Source: Tubulanus polymorphus
Lineage: Eukaryota > Animalia > Nemertea
NCBI RefSeq assembly: GCF_964204645.1
Contig: NC_134035.1
Coordinates: forward strand, 496,001 to 560,000
Length of the DNA: 64,000 nt
Direction: 5' to 3'
Shown here: positions 9,124 to 61,421 of the stretch, in pieces
Position numbering within the stretch: position 1 is the first letter of the stretch
Layout: the number at the start of each line of letters is the position of its first letter
The notes under the pieces: generated by a model
The model's database searches: none
Told to the model about the DNA's origin: nothing
The model's input: only the letters and a program-made list of their open reading frames with translations
Position numbers and translations under genes: made by a program

Positions 9124-11945
9124 TCTATCTATCTATCTATCCATCCATCCATCCATCCACCCACCCATCCATCCATCCATCCATCCATCCACCCACCGAT
9201 CCACCCACCCATCCATCCATCCATCCATCCACCCACCCATCCATCCATCCATCCATCCATCCATCAATCCATCCATCCATCCATCCATCAATCCATCCAT
9301 CCATCCATCCACCCATCCACCCATCCACCCACCCATCCATCCATCCATCCACCCACCCACCCATCCATCCATCTATCCATCCATCCACCCACCCATCCAT
9401 CCATCCATCCATCCACCCACCCATCCACCCACCCATCCATCCATCCATCCACCCACCCATCCACCCATCCATCCATCCATCCACCCACCCACCCATCCAT
9501 CCATCCATCCACCCATCCATTCATCCATCCACCCACCCATCCACCCACCCATCCATCCATCCACCCATCCATCCATCCATCCACCCACCGATCCACCCAC
9601 CCACCCATCCATCCATCCATCCACCCACCCATCCATCCATCCATCCATCCACCCACCCATCCATCCATCCACCCATCCATCCATCCATCCACCCACCCAC
9701 CCATCCATCCATCCACCCATCCATCCATCCATCCATCCACCCACCCATCCACCCACCCATCCATCCATCCATCCACCCATCCATCCATCCACCCATCCAT
9801 CCATCCATCCATCCACCGATCCACCCACCCATCCATCCATCCATCCACCCACCCATCCATCCATCCATCCATCCACCGATCCACCCATCCATCCACCCAT
9901 CCATCCATCCATCCACCCACCCATCCACCCACCCATCCATCCATCCATCCACCCACCCACCGATCCATCCATCCACCCATCCATCCATCCATCCACCGAT
10001 CCATCCATCCATCCATCCACCCATCCATCCATCCATCCATCCACCCACCCATCCACCCACCCATCCACCCATCCACCCACCCACCCACCCATCCATCCAT
10101 CCATCCACCGATCCACCCACCCATCCATCCATCCATCCATCCACCCATCCATCCATCCATCCATCCACCCACCCATCCACCCACCCACCCATCCATCCAT
10201 CCACCCACCCACCGATCCATCCATCCACCCATCCATCCACCCACCCACCGATCCATCCACCCACCGATCCATCCATCCACCGATCCATCCATCCATCCAC
10301 CCACCCATCCATCCATCCATCCATCCACCCACCCATCCACCCACCCATCCACCCATCCATCCACCCACCCACCCACCCATCCATCCATCCATCCATCCAC
10401 CGATCCACCCATCCATCCATCCACCCATCCATCCATCCATCCATCCACCCACCCATCCATCCATCCATCCACCCACCCATCCATCCATCCACCCATCCAT
10501 CCATCCACCCACCCACCCATCCATCCATCCATCCACCCACCCATCCATCCATCCATCCACCCACCCACCGATCCATCCATCCACCCATCCATCCATCCAT
10601 CCATCCACCGATCCATCCATCCATCCATCCACCCATCCATCCATCCATCCATCCATCCACCGATCCACCCACCCATCCATCCACCCACCCACCCACCCAT
10701 CCATCCATCCATCCATCCACCGATCCACCCATCCATCCACCCATCCATCCATCCATCCATCCACCCACCCATCCACCCACCCATCCATCCACCCACCCAC
10801 CCATCCATCCATCCATCCACCGATCCACCCATCCATCCATCCACCCATCCATCCATCCATCCATCCACCCACCCATCCACCCACCCATCCATCCATCCAC
10901 CCACCCATCCATCCATCCACCGATCCACCCATCCATCCATCCATCCACCCACCCATCCACCCACCCATCTATCCATCCACCGATCCACCCATCCATCCAT
11001 CCATCCATCCACCCACCCATCCACCCACCCATCTATCCATCCATCCATCCACCGATCCACCCATCCATCCATCCATCCATCCACCCACCCATCCACCCAC
11101 CCATCCATCCATCCATCCATCCATCCATCCACCCATCCATCCACCCATCCATCCATCCACCCATCTATCCATCCATCCATCCACCCATCCATCCATCCAT
11201 CCATCCACCCACCCACCGATCCATCCATCCACCCATCCATCCATCCATCCACCGATCCATCCATCCATCCATCCACCCATCCATCCATCCATCCACCCAC
11301 CCATCCACCCATCCATCCACCCACCCACCCACCCATCCATCCATCCATCCACCCACCCATCCATCCATCCATCCACCCATCCATCCATCCATCCACCCAC
11401 CCATCCACCCACCCATCCATCCAGCCACCCACCCACCCATCCATCCATCCATCCACCGATCCACCCATCCATCCATCCATCCATCCAGCCACCCACCCAC
11501 CCATCCATCCATCCATCCATCCACCGATCCACCCATCCATCCATCCATCCATCCATCCACCCACCCATCCACCCACCCATCCATCCATCCATCCATCCAT
11601 CCACCCACCCATCCATCCATCCATCCACCCACCCATCCATCCATCCATCCACCCATCCATCCATCCACCCATCTATCCATCCATCCATCCATCCATCCAT
11701 CCACCCACCCATCCATCCATCCATCCATCCATCCATCCATCCATCCATCTTTCCATCCATCTTTCCATCCATCCATCCATCCATCCACCGATCCACCCAT
11801 CCATCCATCCATCCATCCACCGATCCACCCATCCATCCATCCATCCATCCACCCAAACCCACCCATCCATCCATACGCCCGCCCGCCCGCCCGCCCGCCC
11901 GTCCGTCCGTCCGTCCGTCCGTCTATCCGTCTTTCCGTCTATCCG

Positions 11946-12004
<59 letters not shown>

Positions 12005-12069
12005 GTCTATCTGTCTGTCTATCTGTCTATTTGTCTATCTATCTATCTGTCTATCTGTCTATCTGTCTG

Positions 12070-12100
<31 letters not shown>

Positions 12101-12113
12101 GTCTATCTGTCTG

Positions 12114-12164
<51 letters not shown>

Positions 12165-12193
12165 GTCTATCTGTCTGTCTATCTGTCTATCTG

Positions 12194-12272
<79 letters not shown>

Positions 12273-12325
12273 GTCTATCTGTCTGTCTATCTGTCTATCT
12301 GTCTATCTATCTATCTATCTATCTG

Positions 12326-12374
<49 letters not shown>

Positions 12375-12438
12375 ATATCTATCTATCTATCTGTCTATCT
12401 ATCTATCTGTCTATCTATCTATCTATCTATCTGTCTAT
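9124..12438. repeat. Compound tetranucleotide microsatellite: (ATCT)n, (ATCC/ACCC)n ~2.7 kb, (GCCC)n, (GTCC)n, (ATCT/GTCT)n
   Basis: Directly visible. The long PSIH/MDGW ORFs are by-products of the repeat. Confidence 0.97.
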
Positions 12439-12523
12439 CCTAATCGTTGGTGGTAAGCTTTTACAATCGGATGGGCTTATACTTATGGTTACGTTAGGGG
12501 TTATAGATGTTATAAGTGGTGTC

Positions 12524-38476: not shown

Positions 38477-41400
38477 TCAACTATCAAACGATTTGACGGC
38501 GTATATTTCTCTAAGAGATATGCACAACTTGATGACGGGCGTGCCGATTGCTGTGAATACCGTCACGCTATAATACTGTAAATAGTAGGAGACGTCCTGA
38601 ACGGCGATTAAACCCATGATGTGAAGGGTACCGGTACAGGTAGGCGGTAACGCGCGAACACGCCAATACGATAATACCTGCTCGTACTTTCTCGTGCAGA
38701 ATTCCATTGTCACCAAGTCTCCCTAGAAAATAAAAAACACTAAAGCGATTAAATTTCTGCTGAGATTATCATGAAGATTAAGTTCATTTTAGTTTTGAAT
38801 TCTAGATGAACCCGATTTAATTTGAAGGAAATCATATTCCATATTGCTGACTCGCGGCCATTTTTGATTGAAAGAATGTACGTTCTGGTCTATAACTGTG
38901 AATGTATTTCATGTAGAGTACTCATATTTCACATGAGATAATGAGATGATATTATATATCAGCAGATCGATTTAGGTCACGATATCATCCGAGATGGCTG
39001 ACTGGCGGCCATATTTGATTCAAAAAATGAACATTCTGGTCTATCATTGTGAATATATTATAAATAGAGCATTTAATTAATTAATTTTCAGACAATAACT
39101 GATTATATACCAAATAACTGCAGAGGAGTTTCTAACAAAAAGCAATGTTGATGCCGGGCCTGGGTTTAGGAGGTCATTTTGGGATGTCCCGAGTGATAGA
39201 GGCGAACGTGATACCATAGTTATCAAATGGTAATTGAAATTTTTATTTGATCCTGGTATCTGTTAAAACATTATGGACGCAGATCCACAGTTTTCAACTT
39301 CGTTCGACTTCAAGCAAAAACAGTTCATTTCTAATTAGTTGTTGTTTAAAATTCGAAAAATAATCGAAAAATCATTTTCTGAACATGCATATAAAACATA
39401 TTCTGTCGGAATAGATTGTCCCGATTTTAAAGTAGTATTGCACCCGATGTTTGGACCTTCAAACACAGGCCAGCATCGAACACATTGATATATGTGTTCG
39501 TGAGAAATAGTCCGAGAAACGGATTTTATGTAAATGAATTTCTGCATCGGATTTTTGTACAGAAATATTCACGAATTTCTCGTCCCAATAAAAGATATAT
39601 GTAAAAATTTATGATGTAATTACACGGATGGAAAAGCGCGAAAACATCGTACAGAAAATCTTTTAGTTCTAACGAGATCGGTAGGAATACACTAACAGTG
39701 GATGGTAGTGTAAATACTGCAAACGCGAGTGAAACTGTAACGAGCATTTTTGTTGTACGCTGTGATTTTGTAGTTTTCTTTTCAGAAGAAAGAATTTTCG
39801 ATCCCCTGAATAACTGAAATACTATAACAGAATTTGAAAGAACGATGAAAGATAACGGCAGAATGTAAGCGTAGATAACATTCATGGTGAAATACCTTAT
39901 TTGTACAAATAGTTCATAGTAACACCCGAAAACTGGTCGGAAAAATGCACCCACGCAGTAGTTAGAAGATATCGATACGCTCATTCCGATTATGTACAAT
40001 ATAATGAATCTAGCGAATCTGGGCGTACGTATCACGTGACTTGTGAACGGGAAGAGCACAACTGCCGCACGTTCTAGAGATATAGCCACGATTAACCACG
40101 AACTAGTTGAAGATGCAATCGCCATCAGGAATTCATAGATTTGACAACTGATCAGTGAATTCATCACGAATATTGGGCCAGTTTTAAGACGCAAGAGAAC
40201 AAACTGTAAAACAGGCATCAGCGTGAAACCGATACAGAACATTAAATCACTGACTGACAAAACGATCAGATAGTTAGCGTAAGATAAACAGCGGAATCTG
40301 CGGCTTATCATTATCAGGAAAGTAGCCGAATTTCCGAAGGCTCCTAACACGAACAAGACAAGCAGAATAACTAATGACAATGTACGGAAGCTTCCGGACT
40401 TGTTCGCTACAGACATGATGACGATATAACTGCTATAAGTTCGACCAATCTGTATCTTAGTTGAATTCATGATTAACGCCATGATGACGAACTGTTTTGT
40501 GTTTCGACTAAAACTCTCCTCACATGTTGGGAAACTAATTTAAACTGATAGAAAACTACAGAGATTTATTCGTGACATCTATTCACCATTCGTCATGTAA
40601 TCTATCTGAAGTCACAATTCATTCTTGACATAAATCAAAAGTCAATACTCACAAATCCAACCGAATTCACTCGTAATTTGTCAGGATAGTTGATTGTGTC
40701 AAGTCAAATACAACTTTATCGAACTGATTTTTTCATCAAAAATACATTCTCTACGTTGAACATAAAGGAAATGTCGAAATAGACAGAAATTTTAGAGTGT
40801 GAATTTGCTAGCCATAAACTCAAGCCTTTGTTCATTTAGATGAATTGACAAGGTAAAGAAAGGAATACATCAATAAATATAGGGAAAACTGAGCCCTGTA
40901 GATGATGATAAAACATTAGTCTCCGCACACACACACGCAGGCACGCACGCACACACACGCACACTAGGGGCAACCGGATGATATCATAGCATGGGAACTA
41001 TTTGTACGTAAACTCTCTTGAATAATGTGCGCTGTTACGTTAATTAAAGATTTAATTGGAAAAGAAAAGTCTACCGTGGCACAGTAGGACACTAGTACGA
41101 TATAAAACACACCTGAATATCGCTGAAATTGTGAACATTTTTTTCGACTTGTTTTTCCAGATGAAGTGCAGAAACTAGTAACACCAGAATACACATCGTC
41201 CAACTAGATACAATTACCAGCAGTGACACCCTATAAAATAAGCTTATTCATTAGATTATAACAGACATTGAAATTCAAACGTAAATCTACAAGAAATTGG
41301 GATATTGGCTGCTTGTGTTAAATAAATGTAGCCAAGAACAAATTTACACATGAGACCGTGATTTGTCCTTATTTCATGATAATTTTACAGTGTTTGGGAT

Positions 41401-54690: not shown

Positions 54691-57600
54691 ATGGACCGGA
54701 TATTGGATATAGTCTTATGTATTTTCCTCGCGAGGATTGGTTTCGAATTTGAAGCAGCTGCATTGGCTTCAAAATTGAGTAAGTTTCAATCTCCTGTTCA
54801 TCAGTGACCATTGATAGTTAGTACGTACATCGATCTACAGTCTGAACCACAGCCGAATTCATTTGTTTCTTAATGAACTTATCTAGCAGTATCAAACTGG
54901 GAATACATAAACATTAAATACTGTGTAAGGTTTAACCTACGAGCCGCGATCAAGTTGAGATCATTGTACGCAGATAGACAAAAATAATTATACATTGTCC
55001 ATGTAAACTGTCGGCTAACATGTAAATGCTGCTGCTAATTGATACCTGCAAAGAAGACACATCTGTCTCCAAGAAGAAAAATGCTTTAAAGCGGGTTTTG
55101 AAGATATTTATGAAATTTTGCGCGATTGTTTTGTTTTTTTAGAAAGAATTGAAAAATACGACGAACGTTTTTTCGATCTGAGTCGAGGAGTTCGGATAGA
55201 CGAGTTGAAGGCGTTTAATTCAGATGATGCTGACGTCACTTTCAACCGGTAAGATATGTAACTTACCTTATTGTTATTATCTATTGTACAACCAGATTCC
55301 ATTCCATCCATAAATGCAGCAAACTCTCGTAAAGACTTTCAACTCCTCTTAAATTCACGTGTTACTTTTAGTTTGCGATGTTGAAAATGGTTTCTAAAAA
55401 CAAAAAATTTTACAAATGAGTAACAAACAAATATCCATATGAAAAATGTGTATCATTTCAATATAAAGAATCTCACAGCAATTATGAAAATATAAAGTCC
55501 TTAGATAGCTTTAAGTTTATTCAATTCGACCTTTCGAATATATCCTAATAGCCATCTTCAGGAATGAAGGTTCCCGTACACTGATCAGCTGGTGATAGAA
55601 TCGAAGAGACAACACTATTGAAAATGTTTCCAGACATTATTTTGCTTCCACGTCTATCAAACTGCGCCGTCGTTATCTCAAAAAATAGTTAATATTATTT
55701 CTCTCGCATCAGGTACAAATTAGAAACCGATTCGTGGGTTCCATTTCCAAACAAGACGACATCCTGTACTGACGAATTGTCCCATTCTACGCCAACTGTC
55801 GACCCCGATCAAGTCGAAAATTACCGAAATCAGGAACGCAAATTCCTCTTGAAGGTATAAAGCATTAATCAATGTATCTTCGTGAAACGAATTATCTTAA
55901 CCAATATAAATGGACTGAAGTAGAAATTGAACAAATCCCGTAAAACAACAAGAATTATACGGTGCCGCTGTTGTCGACGGAGTTTGTACTGATCTGTAGC
56001 CTATACGTAAGAAGTAAAATTAAAAAGTTGAAATTGAAAAGTTGAGCAAAAATTGCAATGAAAAATTAGGAATTTGTTCATCTCAACTAATTGAAATACT
56101 TGTATTCTCTACGAGGGACGTTTAATTTTCATTTTTTGATAATTTATAATTGCTCCATTGTCGTTTGGTTTCAGTTGCATAAAGCTTGGAATGGGGAATA
56201 TTGGACTAACAAGTGGAACTTGTCGACTGTGCATTGTTCGTGGAGCGGGATCGAGTGCGACCGTAACGGGCTTGTAATGGCGATTAGAATGAGCCTGAAC
56301 AACGTGACCGGTCGAGCGATCAGTTTACATCCGCTCAACTTCTTAAAAGCGATCTGCATAATTCAGAACGATAATCTATACGGACGACTGGAAGACTTCT
56401 TCCAATTAATAAACGAAACCACTTCACTGGAAAGAATTACTCTCTCGTATAACGATTTGAGCGGAGATTTCGGAATACTGGGTCGGTTTCAACGTTTGAA
56501 ATTCATTCAGATTTCAGCTAATTATTTCATTAGCGGTGAAATAACGACTGAATTTTGCGAACTGATCGATTTATTAGTTTTCAGCGTCGGTGAAACGAAG
56601 ATCGGGGGTCTCATACCGCGCTGTTTCGGGTATAAACTCACTAAAGTTCGCTATCTCGATATCGAGTATTGCGACCTCGATGCCGGTCCGATACCGAACG
56701 GGATTACCCACATGGTCGGTTTAAAGTTTTGTCACCTATCCGGAGCAAACCTTCAAGGACAGCTGCCGTGGAACTTCGGCGTGAATTTCAGTTTAGCCGT
56801 CGAAGTTTCGTTGACCGAAAATAACCTGACGGGACACATCCCGGAGTCGTTCGGTTACATGACGAAATTGCAAATCTTGCGTTTGTCCTATAACCAGTTC
56901 GAAGGTCGGATCCCCGATGTGATAAGCAATTATTCGAAGTTGATGATCGTAGATTTGGACAGTAACCGCCTGACCGGGTTACCGCGCACACCGTTTCGGT
57001 CTCACGACCTTCGCGCCATCGACTTGTCCGACAATCCGCTGAACGTCGACATGGCTACATTTTTTGAAATCGTCCAAACCAATCACCAGACGCCGTACGG
57101 TGTTTTTATGCAAACCGCGTTTATACGCTGTAGGAACTGCGGCATCAACGGTTCTCTGACGTCAGACCTTTACTGGTACAACTGGGCCGCTATCATCGAC
57201 CTCAGTCACAATCGGCTACAAGGAAAGGTCCCTGTAGTCGGCATTATGATGTGGTTTTTAACCGAAATCTATCTGAATCACAACCCGTATCTGATCGGCG
57301 CCTTACCGCCGACTTTCAACTGGATAACCGGGCTACGGATACTGGATATATCCCATACAGGAATGAGAGCCTCCAGTAGTCATACACAGGGACTCAATCC
57401 ATCCTTGTTCATCGTCGACACGAGTCGGTTGGTTCAGGTGAAAGATCGCGCGTATTCCTGTCCATCGGTGAGACTGAGAAAGAAAGGTGATCTACCGGGC
57501 AGTGTATTACGTTTAGACCCGGTTTACTACGGATACGACAAGTGCGTGTGTAACCCGGGTTATTTCGGTTCTAAAGGACGCTGTTATCCGTGTCTTGAAT

Positions 57601-59408
57601 CTGGCACGTGTGAGACGGGTTTACCCAATACGACGATGTCGTACGCGTCACAAATGTGGCCGAGTCGTCGTTACAACCCGAACTATTTTCTCAACTGTAC
57701 TCACATCTATAGCGGCCAGCCGACCTGTAACCCGCACGGGAACTGCACGTGCGTTACTAAAATACGTAACGACATGTCATTCGTGGAATGCGATTCGAGT
57801 TGTATGTGTAACCCCTTGTATCACCTAACCGGCCGCAAGTGCTCGCAATGTAAGCCGGGCCGCTTTTACAAAGATGGCTACGCTTGCTACGAATGCATAG
57901 ACCTAAAACGAAACTGGTTAGCTCTGTTCGGTATAATCGTTTCATTGATCGTTCTGGTCGGGATAACGTTGATTCTATGGTATAAGGATAGAGTTCTAGG
58001 AGCAAAGGTTCGATGGGTATTGCACCTCTTCCGTATTTCCTTCCTCGTAGTTCACTTACTAATGGCTACATTCGGTATCGTCCCGACGTGGTCGTTCGAG
58101 TTGGCGGTGCTCACCGTCCTCTTCGGAATGTTGAACCAACAGAACAACGCCAGCGGTATCGTCAAGACGTTCGTGTTTTACATCCAGACTCTGTCGGTCA
58201 CCATACATCGCTTTTCGATTACGGGAATCATCGACTGGTTCAGCAAGATGGAATATTACGTGAAAGATTCGTTGAATTTACGATTTTCTAGTTTCGGTTG
58301 CGTAATGCCGTGGATGAAAGATCCGCTGGGGAAGCTGAAATTCCTCGTAAGCATCATTCCGGGGTTCATCTTCTGTTTAGGCGTGGCCTGCGCAGTTCGC
58401 CTGTTGCTAATAGCCAAGCGTCGATGGCAGACGCGCTTCCTGGAGCCCGATACCGTTCAATCTTTCAACGAAGTGAAATTTTTCGCCACCCGATGTTTCA
58501 GTTTGTTGCTTTTCGTATTCGACTTGACGTTTTATCCGATCGTCTTTCATTCGTTAGCTGCGATAGCTCCGTGTTCGTACGATCCATCGGATGGACACCA
58601 GTATATGAAAGCTTACCAATACATCGACTGCGATTCGGTCGCCTATTCGTCCATGTATTCCACTGGGCTCCCGGCATTGATAGTCTACGGAGCGGTCTGT
58701 CCTGTCATTCTATGCACTATCTTAGCATTGATAAATCGTAAATTACAACGCTTGAGACAACTCACCGATCACGATCTGTTAAACGAAACCGTTCAGACCG
58801 ATATCAAATGCATCGAAGAACTGATTAGCAAATTAGCCGGACCCTTTACCAGTCCGCATAACGTGTACATGTCCAGCTTTTTCCTATTACAAAAAATGTT
58901 GATCGCCCTAATTTTTACGCTTATGAACGAACACGGAATTGCGCAGGTCGTCTTTCTGTCGGTGATGTATTTAGCGTTGCTTTTCCATCAGTTTCATTCG
59001 CATCCGTTTTTAGTAACGGGTCGGTTCGATTTGGAAAACAACTGCTATCAAACAGCTCTGGGTATTCTGGTGACGACGACCGTTTGTAGCGGACTGCTGT
59101 GGAATACCGGGCGGCCGTTTAACGCCGACACCTATTCGACCATCATCGCTATATTCGTATCGGTGTTGAACGTGTTGATGGTACTGATCTATGTCGTGTG
59201 TACCATTTTTCGAGTAGCGAAGAAGAAAGTTCGCGTTCAAGCTGAAAGTATCGAAGACGAAGAAGATGGTACCGGTGACGGTGCGGATCCTGCTGAGACA
59301 CTTATGCTTTTACCAAGCGGAGGATACGGTGCCTTCCAAAGTCTCCCGGTCAAAAGAAACGTCGCTCGTGTAAATGAAAATGCTGCGAATGCGTTTACGA
59401 CATTGTAA
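54691..59408 (+). CDS. LRR + EGF/Cys-rich + multi-pass transmembrane receptor-like protein, 4 exons (54691-54778, 55143-55248, 55713-55854, 56175-59408), ~1189 aa
   Basis: Signal-like N-terminus MDRILDIVLCIFLARIG. Cap QERKFLLKLHKAWNGEYW...HCSWSGIEC. About a dozen LxxLxLxxNxLxGxIP repeats. Cys-rich CVCNPGYFG..CYPC and CMC..TGRKCSQCKPG. ~10-11 hydrophobic segments. Splice phases 1/2/0 are consistent. Confidence 0.88.
55524..55565 (-). ncRNA. Degenerate minimal type I hammerhead ribozyme (Penelope pLTR-type) in an intron
   Basis: Minus strand AUUC-CUGAAGA-U-GGCUAU-uaggau-AUAUUC-GAAA-G-GUC-GAAU: core boxes intact, stem I 4 bp, stem II with one mismatch. Confidence 0.5.
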
Positions 59409-59945
59409 TAATCATTGCTTTTAATGACTGTTATTTGAGGCTTTCGCTGTGTCTATTGACGGGGTGTCCATTTATTGTACCATAATACTCAAACATTTTG
59501 CGGAAGCGAACACTTCTAAAAATCACTTATTAATTAGCTCTTATCATTAAAATCCTAGAAAATTAGGCAGAAATCCGTGAAGGAGTTTAGGAGCCTTAGG
59601 CCTTCTGGGAATTATCTGTTTGAAAAGGGGAATAATATTGTTGATGATAATAATGTTAATGATAATGATAATAATAGTCTGGAAGAAATCGATAGTGAAA
59701 AAGCAGAAAAACCTAATGACAAAAACACTGTACGATTCGAGTACAATTAAACATATTTGTATTTTTCTTATCATTACGAATTTTTAATACAAAAAGATTC
59801 ATTTTAGCTTCTTACAATTTACAATAACAATTTACTACTGTAACGAACATTTCATTGCCTATAATAATTACCCAGCTTAATTAGCAATAGATTTAAAGTA
59901 CATATTATGTATCGAATGAGTCTATCACCTTCAAGAGACAAAATA

Positions 59946-61421
59946 TTAACCTTCATATACATTAGGTTTAAAACCATGCACGCCAAGACCAGTTATTTTA
60001 AATAAAGAACCAGCTAATGGATCTGTCTTTTTGGATTCCTCCGCAGTATGTCCAGAAGAGGTTACAAAAAGTTCATCGTAATTGGGACCGCCAAAACAGC
60101 ATGAAGCCGTCCTCAAAGCCGGAATTTTCACAGTACACAGAAGCTTGCCTAAAAAATAGTAACAAAACATATTAAAATAAATCCTATGTTGGTCGCAAAA
60201 AATATTTGCAATTGCGCGTATTAAAAATTACACGCTTTTTGTGTTTTATAATGACGAATATACAAGATAATTCAATAAAAGCTGTCTTCAAGTTTCACTT
60301 TGCAGGTACGACTCAATGCGACAGGTTTCAGTTTTACCTGATATGGGATCGAACCTAGCAACTTGACCTCCGTAGTGAAAAGCGATCCATAACATTCCCT
60401 CGTTATCGATACACATACCATCGGCAATACCGATATAGTCATCAGAACCTTCTTCCGGGAATTCAATGACACAACGTTTGTTACCTGTAAAAAAACATGA
60501 AATGTTTTATACTTATCTTTCTCAATATGTCATATCTTCCATTTAAATCGAAGCCAAGATGCACAAAGCCGAAAATGGATTTAAATCTGACGACTGTTCT
60601 TAAAACTGTCGCTGCCAATGTGTTCTTCTAATTGAGTGCAACTGACTGTAAGGTTCTTCAACTTACTCGCTACGCCTGTTTGTTTATCATAATCAAAGGC
60701 ATAAACTCGGGAGGGAATACTGTCGACAAAATAAAGAGTCTTATCATCGAGACTCCAAGCGAGACCATTCGAAACTGTGACTTTATCAGTAAACTGTGTA
60801 ACCTTCTTATCTTTATCAATGCAATAGAGAGAACCTTGTTCTTTTTCCATAACAGCAGGATTTCTACCAAAAGGCATTGTCCCTGAAAAAAAAACGAATG
60901 ATGCGGAAATAGAAGTCACAGATGCCGAAGACAAATTCACGTAATTCGGAAAGATGATGAGTACCTGCCCAAATACGACCAGAAGAGTCACATTTAGCGT
61001 CGTTAAATATTGTACTTCGACCTTCTTCGACTGAAGCTATCACCGAATAATCATCGGGATTGTTCCAATCAAACTGAATCATTGAATGGTCCAAATTTGT
61101 CACAAATCCCCCTCCTTTTCTCGGCAGGATGAACGTGGATACAGAATCTACGTGAAAATAATTACCCGGTAGTTTAAAAAATCACCTCTATGGTGAAGAA
61201 GTAGAAAAAAAACTCATAAATTGTTCATTTTGATGAGAATACTTACTGCCGATAGTAATACTTTCAGTTACATTTGTTCGATAATTCCAACGGATGATTT
61301 TATCGACATCCGCCCAAATGTTAACGAAATATAGAGTCTGAGTTGATTCATCCCAATGAGGTCCTTCTCCAATACCAGACGTTACGTTCTTCAGAACGCA
61401 AGTCACCTTCGGTTCCGACAT
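59946..61421 (-). CDS. RGN: Regucalcin / SMP-30 gluconolactonase, 5 exons (61421-61247, 61147-60965, 60882-60667, 60484-60338, 60148-59946), ~307 aa
   Basis: GEGPHWD, FNDAKCDSSGRIWAGTM, GSLY, VSNGLAWS..KTLYFVDS, DGMCIDNEGMLW, TASCCFGGPNYDELFVTS, AGSLFKITGLG. Confidence 0.94.

What the first reader, a model, noticed from the sequence alone, without database searches (positions are those of the whole stretch)
54691..59408. Animal receptor-like gene with a plant/protist-type LRR ectodomain, EGF-like repeats and a ~10-11-pass membrane domain
Seen: the spliced product has an N-cap ERxFLxxLxxxxxGxxWxxxWxxxxxxCxWxGIxC and LRRs of the LxxNxLxGxIP type. Then come Cys-rich EGF/laminin-like modules and a polytopic domain with motifs KTFVFYIQ, LNLxxxxxxC, YP, YMKAYQYIDC and HPF. 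There is no kinase or TIR domain. The acidic tail carries dileucine (ETLMLL) and YxxF (YGAF) sorting motifs. Established: this LRR subtype and cap are characteristic of plant receptor-like proteins, stramenopiles and some bacteria, not of animal Toll-like receptors or LGRs. Inference: this is a non-canonical surface sensor (pattern recognition or chemosensing) that signals through its membrane domain, possibly an undescribed invertebrate receptor family.
Basis: partly seen in the sequence, partly recalled or inferred. Interest (0 to 1): 0.85.

Follow-up and report, generated by a model that had tools for sequence, protein, structure and literature searches.

The report
Plant-type LRR receptor with 11-helix membrane domain
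This is a real, spliced and transcribed ribbon-worm gene for a surface receptor-like protein that joins a plant-style leucine-rich-repeat ectodomain to an 11-helix membrane domain of unsolved fold; it belongs to an old, uncharacterised family kept in sponges, cnidarians and a few bilaterians.

Summary
Window 54691-59408 (+) is a four-exon gene of the nemertean Tubulanus polymorphus (NCBI LOC141913188, 1189 aa, "uncharacterized protein"). Contigs of one public run carry all three GT..AG splice joints. The protein has a signal-like N-terminus and a plant-type LRRNT_2 cap. About 12-15 LRRs follow, whose nearest solved structures are all plant receptor-kinase ectodomains. Next come a 17-Cys module that is only weakly laminin-EGF-like, 11 membrane helices (N-out, C-in) and a cytoplasmic tail. 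There is no kinase, TIR, 7TM, PLAT or GPS domain.

It is not an orphan. The genome holds two paralogues. A scan of 1.84 billion representative proteins found 52 relatives. The named full-length ones come from Saccoglossus, homoscleromorph sponges and cnidarians. A more distant hit from the unicellular holozoan Pigoraptor carries an added PA domain. The family tree follows phylum boundaries, which argues for vertical descent with many losses rather than gene transfer.

The membrane domain models confidently (pLDDT 86.7) but matches no solved structure. Its predicted fold recurs in protist proteins that carry ephrin-receptor-like Cys repeats and occasional sub-threshold PF06011 "TRP" hits. That suggests kinship with the CRMP/SadA kind of contact receptor, which I could not test directly. 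Function is inferred.

The parts
54691..54778 (+). Exon 1: start codon and hydrophobic signal-like N-terminus (MDRILDIVLCIFLARIGF...)
   Evidence: Translation matches P0001. Joint 54778|55143 with GT..AG ends in run X2. The signal peptide is read from the sequence only; no predictor was run.
55143..55248 (+). Exon 2: low-confidence linker (residues about 30-65)
   Evidence: contig 11 of X2 links exons 1, 2 and 3. pLDDT is below 50 in the full-length model.
55713..55854 (+). Exon 3: linker and start of the LRRNT_2 cap (ERKFLLK)
   Evidence: Joint 55854|56175 has 141 letters on its shorter side in X2. LRRNT_2 covers residues 104-141.
56175..56261 (+). Exon 4, first part: rest of the plant-type LRRNT_2 cap (WxxxxxxCxWxGIxC), residues 113-141
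   Evidence: Pfam PF08263, 24.1 bits against a cut-off of 20.7, E=4.3e-5.
56262..57398 (+). LRR solenoid, residues about 142-520: about 12-15 repeats, many of the plant-specific LxxNxLxGxIP type, with 7 of the protein's 11 N-x-S/T sites
   Evidence: Pfam LRR_8, LRR_1 and LRR_4. Repeat list. Model pLDDT mostly above 90. The 50 best PDB matches are all plant LRR receptor ectodomains, E down to 1e-17.
57441..57908 (+). Cys-rich module, residues 535-690: 17 Cys, 16 of them invariant across 32 relatives. It starts with CxCxxGYxG and ends with a membrane-proximal laminin-EGF/DUF7630-like unit.
   Evidence: Alignments A3 and A4. Weak laminin beta-2 LE match, E=0.013. Sub-threshold DUF7630 and EGF_laminin hits in relatives.
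57915..59261 (+). Polytopic membrane domain, residues 693-1141: 11 helices. It has an extracellular loop with a conserved Cys, an extracellular beta-hairpin closed by two conserved Cys, and a cytoplasmic amphipathic helix between helices 7 and 8.
   Evidence: AlphaFold2 on a 32-sequence alignment, pLDDT 86.7, pTM 0.87. The same helices appear in the full-length model. Hydropathy. No PDB match. Atlas fold matches.
59262..59408 (+). Cytoplasmic tail (basic patch, acidic run, ETLMLL, YGAF) and stop codon
   Evidence: pLDDT below 50. Not conserved in the paralogues. The X2 contig runs on to 59628, so the 3' UTR is at least 220 nt.

Best explanation
LOC141913188 of Tubulanus polymorphus encodes a glycosylated cell-surface receptor-like protein.

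Shown:
- The gene is real, spliced and transcribed.
- Its domain order is signal-like N-terminus, plant-type LRRNT_2 cap, LRR solenoid, a module with 16 invariant Cys, 11 membrane helices and a short tail.
- It belongs to a family of about 50 sequence clusters. The family has three copies in this genome and members in a hemichordate, homoscleromorph sponges and cnidarians, with a more distant relative in a unicellular holozoan. Its tree follows phylum boundaries.

Inferred:
- Topology is N-out, C-in. The conserved Cys pairs fall in loops predicted outside, and the basic loops fall inside.
- The Cys-rich-plus-polytopic part is the animal version of a module that is widespread in protists, where ephrin-receptor-like or EGF-like Cys repeats sit directly before a multi-pass domain. 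The studied examples would be the apicomplexan and ciliate CRMPs and Dictyostelium SadA.
- By analogy, the LRR solenoid binds a peptide or surface ligand, or another cell or substrate. The event is passed through the rigid Cys-rich stalk to the membrane domain, which acts through partner proteins or through ion flux.

I take 'contact or ligand sensor / adhesion receptor' as the most likely role. The output mechanism is open.
For: Gene and expression:
- (three GT..AG joints in X2 contigs; continuous in the DNA-like run X1).

Domains:
- (Pfam LRR families, LRRNT_2 above its cut-off).
- all 50 best PDB fold matches are plant LRR receptor ectodomains.
- the best non-family sequence matches are plant LRR receptor kinases and receptor-like proteins.

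Family:
- exactly three copies in the genome, also by profile search.
- 52 relatives among 1.84 billion representatives, 41 of them at E<1e-10.
- named sources are Saccoglossus, Corticium, Oscarella, Xenia, Sanderia and Pigoraptor.
- all 32 aligned members carry LRRs.
- Bilateria clade 100/99, sponge clade 100/100, cnidarian-bearing clade 93/85.

Membrane domain:
- pLDDT 86.7, pTM 0.87.
- Q783 is invariant in helix 4 and E1066 near-invariant before helix 10, along with P900, A1023 and P1056.

Protist kinship of the module:
- TM-score 0.61-0.69 over 309-375 residues to clusters from Haptophyta, Chlorophyta and Ciliophora, in which 45-78% of members carry PF07699 Ephrin_rec_like.
- language-model neighbours are the same kind of cluster.
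- the same DUF7630-plus-membrane module sits behind other ectodomains (PA plus LRR in Pigoraptor; RCC1 plus TIG in a 3128-aa metagenomic protein).

Literature on the analogues:
- CRMP core is two EGF-like domains plus nine membrane helices, with Dictyostelium homologues, and is needed for contact-triggered rhoptry discharge (PMC9815656, PMC9670195).
- SadA has three EGF-like repeats plus nine membrane helices and acts in substrate adhesion and phagocytosis (PMC2173991).
Against: - No ligand, localisation or signalling output is shown for any member.
- The link to CRMP and SadA rests on architecture and on fold matches to unnamed protist clusters. No CRMP, SadA or ComC sequence was available by reference, so none was compared.
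- CRMP and SadA are described with nine membrane helices, whereas this protein has 11.
- The word-indexed sequence searches with the membrane half found nothing outside the family, and a single-sequence phmmer reached only 52 proteins.
- The kind of run X2 is not on record. It is taken as RNA only because its contigs are spliced.
- The only run guessed to be RNA (X5, from 2015) holds none of the gene.
- A polytopic protein of this kind could sit in an internal membrane rather than at the surface.
Confidence: 0.55

Rival explanations
1. The membrane domain is a distant member of the PF06011 'TRP' family (the fungal Flc/Pkd2/TrpR kind). On this reading the protein is primarily a Ca2+-permeable, possibly stretch- or ligand-gated, channel or a small-molecule carrier, and the LRR ectodomain acts as gate or anchor.
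For: -: the membrane domain of family member P0017, residues 275-400, aligns to PF06011 positions 280-406 of 426 (E=4.6e-4, 19.6 bits).
- the distant relative P0052 aligns to the same part of the profile (positions 273-399, E=0.31).
- structurally similar protist clusters have 12% of members with PF06011. A cluster with 42% PF06011 members matches model residues 178-448 at TM-score 0.49.
- There are conserved polar residues inside helices (Q783, E1066).
- Pkd2 of fission yeast passes Ca2+ on membrane stretch (PMC9727806, abstract).
- An earlier first-stage note on another piece of this genome also called the domain TRP-like.
Against: - P0001 itself and 31 of the 32 members give no PF06011 hit even at E<=1. 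The one hit is below the 28.5-bit cut-off.
- PF06011 finds nothing in this genome, although that search rang nowhere, not even in its controls.
- Only the last four helices align.
- There is no ML-like N-terminal domain as in the fungal proteins.
- There is no fold match to any solved TRP or polycystin channel.
- Channel activity is not firmly established for most PF06011 proteins either.
Confidence: 0.2
2. It is a structural adhesion or matrix-anchoring protein, or a resident of internal membranes (ER, Golgi or secretory vesicles), with no sensing role. The polytopic domain would serve only as an anchor or escort.
For: - SadA is described chiefly as an adhesion molecule.
- CRMPs are also proposed to escort partner proteins.
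- The cytoplasmic tail is not conserved among the paralogues, so the family has no conserved cytoplasmic docking motif.
Against: - An 11-helix domain with invariant intramembrane polar residues and conserved extracellular disulfide loops, kept across sponge, cnidarian and bilaterian members, is far more than an anchor needs.
- The ectodomain is of the ligand-binding receptor type.
Confidence: 0.15
3. It is a polycystin-1-like or adhesion-GPCR/LGR-like receptor, that is, a member of a known animal family that joins LRRs to a multi-pass domain.
For: Polycystin-1 also has N-terminal LRRs and 11 membrane helices, and LGRs join LRRs to 7TM (general knowledge). CRMPa was called GPCR-like by PANTHER.
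Against: - Pfam finds no PLAT, GPS/GAIN, REJ, PKD_channel or 7tm hit in any of the 32 members.
- No solved polycystin, TRP or GPCR chain stands out in the Foldseek or VIA-align searches.
- The LRRs are plant-type with an LRRNT_2 cap, not the animal LRRNT/LRRCT type.
Confidence: 0.03
4. The gene is a contaminant or a recent horizontal acquisition from a plant, stramenopile or bacterium.
For: The LRR domain's best non-family matches are plants, a diatom and a bacterium. The coding region has a higher GC content (about 0.44-0.46) than its flanks (about 0.37).
Against: - It has three GT..AG introns that are spliced in a run of the same organism.
- It lies on a 14-Mb chromosome-scale contig between animal genes, a rhodopsin-type GPCR and SMP-30.
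- There are three diverged paralogues on three contigs.
- The family tree follows animal phyla.
- No plant or bacterial protein shares the membrane half.
- Coding exons are normally richer in GC than introns in AT-rich genomes.
Confidence: 0.02

Closest known systems
Plant LRR receptor kinases and receptor-like proteins (MIK2, HAESA, RGFR1, FLS2, BRI1, EIX1/2)
   Same: The LRRNT_2 cap, 24-residue repeats of the LxxNxLxGxIP type, and a superhelical solenoid. They are the best structural matches (E 1e-17 to 1e-14) and the best sequence matches for residues about 100-520.
   Different: Plant receptors have one membrane helix followed by a kinase or a short tail. This protein has a Cys-rich stalk and 11 helices, with no kinase. 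Identity is only 20-30%, and no plant protein shares the C-terminal half.
Alveolate CRMPs (Toxoplasma CRMPa/b, Plasmodium CRMP1-4, Tetrahymena CRMP1/2) and their Dictyostelium homologues
   Same: A variable adhesive ectodomain, then EGF-like, ephrin-receptor-like or furin-like Cys repeats directly before a C-terminal multi-pass domain, with the N-terminus outside and the C-terminus inside. No solved structure exists (PMC9815656, PMC9670195). Protist clusters with that architecture share the predicted membrane fold of this protein.
   Different: CRMPs are described with nine helices (five in Tetrahymena), are much larger, and carry Kringle, MAR or lectin domains rather than LRRs. Direct homology was not tested here because no sequence was available by reference.
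Dictyostelium SadA (and ComC)
   Same: SadA has a signal peptide, extracellular EGF-like repeats and nine predicted helices, and acts as a surface adhesion and phagocytosis receptor (PMC2173991). Two family members give weak hits to Pfam PF24141, 'ComC LRR domain'.
   Different: SadA has no LRR and nine rather than 11 helices. No sequence or fold comparison could be made here.
Pfam PF06011 'TRP' domain proteins (yeast Flc1-3, fission-yeast Pkd2, Aspergillus TrpR)
   Same: A multi-pass domain of about 430 residues after an extracellular or luminal N-terminal domain. There are sub-threshold, colinear hits to the last four helices, and structurally similar protist clusters are partly annotated PF06011.
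   Different: The hits are below the gathering score, and P0001 itself has none. Fungal members carry an ML-like N-terminal domain rather than LRRs and Cys repeats. Only about a third of the domain aligns.
Polycystin-1 (PKD1)
   Same: N-terminal LRRs and 11 membrane helices, with the N-terminus outside and the C-terminus inside.
   Different: It lacks PLAT, GAIN/GPS, REJ and PKD repeats and has no TRP-channel-like final six helices. There is no fold match to solved polycystin structures. The LRR subtype also differs.

Membership tests
Plant-specific-type LRR ectodomain (LRRNT_2 + PS-LRR) | N-terminal cap matching Pfam PF08263 LRRNT_2 above the gathering score | tested here: met
   P0001 residues 104-141 score 24.1 bits against a cut-off of 20.7, E=4.3e-5. 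Ten of 32 family members match.
Plant-specific-type LRR ectodomain (LRRNT_2 + PS-LRR) | 24-residue repeats with the LxxLxLxxNxLxGxIPxx consensus | tested here: met
   The family consensus shows repeated LxxNxLxGxIP units. Twelve pattern matches are listed in P0001; one is the cap itself, several repeats are canonical and some are degenerate.
Plant-specific-type LRR ectodomain (LRRNT_2 + PS-LRR) | Structure closest to plant LRR receptor ectodomains rather than TLR, LGR or Slit type | tested here: met
   All 50 best Foldseek PDB matches are plant LRR receptor ectodomains.
PF06011 TRP (Flc/Pkd2-like) domain | Pfam PF06011 match at or above the gathering score (28.5 bits) | tested here: not met
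   P0001 has no hit at E<=1. One of 32 members reaches 19.6 bits. P0052 reaches 10.2 bits.
PF06011 TRP (Flc/Pkd2-like) domain | Shared fold over the whole multi-pass domain | tested here: inconclusive
   An Atlas cluster with 42% PF06011 members has TM-score 0.49 over model residues 178-448. Better-matching clusters (TM-score 0.61-0.69) carry PF06011 in only 12% of members or not at all. No solved PF06011 structure turned up for comparison.
CRMP / SadA-type Cys-repeat multi-pass receptors | EGF-like or ephrin-receptor-like Cys repeats immediately N-terminal to a C-terminal multi-pass domain, ectodomain outside | tested here: met
   A module of 17 Cys (16 invariant) ends a few residues before helix 1. 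The topology inferred from conserved Cys loops and basic loops is N-out, C-in. The EGF-like character itself is weak.
CRMP / SadA-type Cys-repeat multi-pass receptors | Homology of the membrane core to CRMP, SadA or Dictyostelium Q86I19 | not testable with these tools
   No CRMP, SadA or ComC sequence could be obtained by reference. The only indirect evidence is fold matches to protist clusters that combine Ephrin_rec_like repeats with a multi-pass domain.
CRMP / SadA-type Cys-repeat multi-pass receptors | Nine membrane helices | tested here: not met
   The model has 11 long helices. The shorter Atlas clusters align from about residue 82-109 onward, that is, without the first three or four helices.
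Polycystin-1 family | PLAT, GAIN/GPS and REJ domains and a TRP-like channel half | tested here: not met
   No such Pfam hit appears in any of the 32 members. No polycystin chain appears among the fold matches.
LGR / rhodopsin-type or adhesion GPCR | Seven-helix domain matching a 7tm Pfam family | tested here: not met
   No 7tm hit, and the model has 11 helices.
Toll-like receptors | Single membrane helix followed by a cytoplasmic TIR domain | tested here: not met
   No TIR hit, and the membrane domain is polytopic.

The most novel reading that the evidence does not exclude
The family is the so far unnoticed animal branch of an ancient eukaryotic class of contact sensors that combine Cys repeats with a multi-pass domain (the CRMP/SadA kind). 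Its 11-helix module is a fold without any solved structure. That module would work as a receptor-operated ion pathway gated by a plant-style LRR ectodomain. The family would have been present in the first animals and lost in most bilaterian lineages, including all the usual model animals.
Probability: 0.25. Interest if true: 0.8.

Novelty: new variant of a known kind. Interest (0 to 1): 0.55.

Why it matters
Animal LRR receptors (TLRs, LGRs, the Slit/Trk kinds) use a different LRR subtype and a single helix or a 7TM domain. Here a plant-style LRR solenoid sits on an 11-helix domain with no solved structure.

The family is conserved in sponges, cnidarians, a hemichordate and a nemertean, with a more distant relative in a unicellular relative of animals. 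None of the 30 clusters I looked up comes from a vertebrate, arthropod, nematode or mollusc.

If the suspected kinship with the CRMP and SadA receptors holds, free-living animals would offer tractable relatives of a module that apicomplexan parasites need for invasion. It would also add a receptor class to the toolkit of the first animals. The confident model gives a starting point for structural and electrophysiological work.

Tried and rejected
- Word-indexed homology search with the membrane half of the protein found only the protein itself. The same tool with the Cys-plus-membrane alignment A3 scored nothing. The index is too insensitive for a family at 20-30% identity, so these blanks say little.
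- Profile search of the membrane domain against PDB sequences gave no hit even at E<=10.
- Foldseek against the PDB gave a best E of 0.08 with TM-scores of 0.1-0.2.
- PF06011 against the genome gave no match, but its controls rang nowhere either, so the result is uninformative.
- Pfam on the Cys-rich stretch of P0001 gave nothing significant.
- The one run guessed to be RNA (X5) holds none of the gene.
- The look-up of encoding contigs for two unnamed relatives returned sample codes but no organism.
- Polycystin-1, LGR, TLR, contamination and horizontal transfer were considered and rejected, as set out under the rival explanations.
The full-length protein used is the database record P0001 that a search returned, and the exons were checked one by one by reference.

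Full report
**What is there.** The window comes from contig C11 of the nemertean Tubulanus polymorphus. One long open frame runs from 56091 to 59408 on the + strand. Three short upstream exons were read from the sequence. The exons are 54691-54778, 55143-55248, 55713-55854 and 56175-59408. They add up to 3570 bases, or 1189 codons plus the stop. Translated one by one, they give the pieces of protein P0001, NCBI "uncharacterized protein LOC141913188", which a search returned at 100% identity.

**Expression.** Contigs of public run X2, from the same organism, carry all three joints with GT..AG ends: 54778|55143, 55248|55713 and 55854|56175. The last has 141 letters on its shorter side. X2 covers the large exon up to 59628. 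Run X1 is continuous across the introns, like genomic DNA. The kind of X2 is not on record, so "RNA" is inferred from the spliced contigs. The only run guessed to be RNA (X5, from 2015) holds none of the gene.

**Setting.** The neighbours are ordinary animal genes. A single-exon rhodopsin-type GPCR lies at 39529-40482 (-), and SMP-30/gluconolactonase exons lie just downstream on the minus strand. Together with the three introns and the 14-Mb contig, this rules out contamination.

**Ectodomain.**
- Pfam finds LRR_8, LRR_1 and LRR_4. On the full-length protein it also finds the plant-type cap LRRNT_2, at 24.1 bits against a cut-off of 20.7.
- Many repeats follow the plant-specific LxxNxLxGxIP pattern.
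- The full-length AlphaFold2 model (mean pLDDT 82, LRR region mostly above 90) was searched against the PDB. All 50 best matches are plant LRR receptor ectodomains such as MIK2, HAESA, RGFR1, FLS2, BRI1 and ERL1, at E from 1e-17 to 3e-14.
- A sequence search with residues 100-690 gave 2180 proteins at E<=1e-10. The best, apart from family members, are overwhelmingly plant receptor kinases and receptor-like proteins, plus a diatom and a bacterium.

**Cys-rich module (residues 535-690).** It holds 17 Cys, of which 16 are invariant in 32 relatives. It opens with CxCxxGYxG and ends with GRxCSxCxxGYYKxGxxCxxC just before the first membrane helix. P0001's own stretch has no significant Pfam hit. Relatives give sub-threshold hits to DUF7630 and EGF_laminin. 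The family profile reaches laminin beta-2 LE domains only at E=0.013. "EGF/laminin-like" is thus a fair but weak label.

**Membrane domain (residues 693-1141).**
- A model built on a 32-sequence alignment is confident (pLDDT 86.7, pTM 0.87). It shows 11 long helices, short loop helices that carry a conserved Cys, a beta-hairpin closed by two conserved Cys, and an amphipathic helix between helices 7 and 8.
- I infer the topology by placing the ectodomain outside. The conserved Cys loops then fall outside, and the Lys/Arg-rich loops and the tail fall inside. That gives N-out, C-in.
Q783, P900, A1023 and P1056 are invariant and E1066 is nearly so.
- The tail motifs ETLMLL and YGAF are present but absent from both paralogues.

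**Family.**
- The genome has exactly three copies, on contigs C11, C7 and C8. They are about 30% identical, each with one long exon and the same architecture. A profile search finds no more.
- A phmmer scan of 1.84 billion representatives with the C-terminal half found 52 proteins, 41 of them at E<1e-10. Most are 950-1140 aa long and match in their C-terminal half.
- I looked up 30 clusters. The named ones come from Tubulanus, Saccoglossus kowalevskii, Corticium candelabrum, Oscarella pearsei and O. lobularis, the octocoral Xenia and the jellyfish Sanderia. A distant hit (E=4.9e-6, over about 80 residues) is from the unicellular holozoan Pigoraptor. All are "uncharacterized" or named only after a Dictyostelium LRR protein.
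- All 32 aligned members carry LRRs.
- A maximum-likelihood tree of the Cys-plus-membrane part separates three groups. One is a bilaterian clade of Saccoglossus, two unnamed proteins and the three Tubulanus copies (100/99). One is a homoscleromorph sponge clade (100/100). One is a clade holding the cnidarians (93/85). The root is only a midpoint.
- This pattern fits vertical descent from an early animal with lineage-specific duplications and many losses. It does not fit transfer.
- Paper searches found no description of the family.

**What the membrane domain resembles.**
- Among predicted structures of the ESM Atlas, the model matches its own family at TM-score 0.80. It matches clusters from Haptophyta, Chlorophyta and Ciliophora at 0.61-0.69 over 309-375 residues.
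- In several of those clusters, 45-78% of members carry Ephrin_rec_like Cys repeats, and in one, 12% carry PF06011 "TRP". A cluster with 42% PF06011 members matches the last seven helices at 0.49. Language-model neighbours point to the same clusters.
- Two sub-threshold Pfam hits to PF06011 align the last four helices colinearly with profile positions about 275-405: P0017 at E=4.6e-4 and P0052 at E=0.31. P0001 and 31 of the 32 members have no such hit.
- The module also occurs behind other ectodomains: PA plus LRR in Pigoraptor, and RCC1 plus TIG in a 3128-aa metagenomic protein.

I conclude that "Cys repeats plus this multi-pass fold" is an old eukaryotic module. Membership in PF06011 is not established.

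**Closest studied systems (from papers, not tested here).**
- The apicomplexan and ciliate CRMPs have a conserved core of two EGF-like domains plus nine membrane helices, with ephrin-receptor-like and furin-like repeats. Dictyostelium homologues are predicted to fold alike, and no structure has been solved. They are needed for contact-triggered rhoptry or mucocyst discharge (PMC9815656, PMC9670195).
- Dictyostelium SadA has three EGF-like repeats plus nine predicted helices and is a surface adhesion and phagocytosis receptor (PMC2173991).
- Fission-yeast Pkd2, a PF06011 protein, passes Ca2+ on membrane stretch (PMC9727806).

No sequence of these proteins was available by reference, so the decisive profile and structure comparisons were left out.

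**Most likely mechanism.** Most of this is inferred. The protein is a surface contact or ligand sensor, or an adhesion receptor. The LRR solenoid would bind a peptide or surface ligand, as its plant look-alikes do. The disulfide-rich stalk would couple it rigidly to the 11-helix domain. The conserved intramembrane Gln and Glu and the conserved loops suggest that this domain does more than anchor. It may work through partner proteins or through ion flux. I put about 0.55 on the receptor/contact-sensor reading. I put 0.2 on a primarily channel or carrier role of the PF06011 kind, 0.15 on a mere anchor or internal-membrane role, and a few percent on a known animal family or on gene transfer.

**Verdict.** The protein is a new variant of a known kind: an LRR receptor ectodomain on a protist-type module of Cys repeats and a multi-pass domain. 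A first-stage note on another piece of this genome (s1-507042) describes what is probably one of the paralogues in similar words. It is not independent evidence.

Noticed in passing
window 9127-12440: A 3.3-kb microsatellite of (ATCC)n grading into (TCTA)n. It explains the GC content of 0.55-0.58 and the GC skew down to -0.94 in the composition profile.
   Followed up: partly
window 39526-40482 (-): A single-exon ORF of 318 aa matches the rhodopsin-family 7tm_1 model (E=9e-17) and weakly matches a serpentine chemoreceptor family. It is an intronless GPCR gene about 14 kb upstream of the finding.
   Followed up: partly
window 59946-60472 (-): Exons of an SMP-30/gluconolactonase/LRE-like gene (PF08450, E=7e-7) lie on the opposite strand, tail to tail with the finding and about 540 bases from its stop codon.
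   Followed up: partly
window 55524-55565 (intron 2 of the gene): A short stretch where word depth in the DNA-like run X1 rises from about 30 to about 210 and many contigs end with loose ends. It is probably a dispersed repeat inside the intron.
   Followed up: no
L005 5760-8903 (G000:C7) and L006 5802-9050 (G000:C8): Two paralogues with the same LRR, Cys-rich and 11-helix architecture, each in one long exon and about 30% identical to the query. Both end a few residues after the last helix, the C8 copy with a CCCC run. An earlier first-stage note (s1-507042) probably concerns one of them.
   Followed up: partly
L008 564-9950 (metagenomic contig, protein P0052): An intronless 3128-aa protein carries RCC1-like propellers and a TIG domain ahead of the same DUF7630-like Cys unit and multi-pass domain. 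The module therefore also sits behind quite different ectodomains. The organism is unknown.
   Followed up: partly
window 54856-59589: Runs X1 and X3 show about 35 single-base differences and a few small indels from the window across the gene. These are probably allelic variation between haplotypes or individuals.
   Followed up: no
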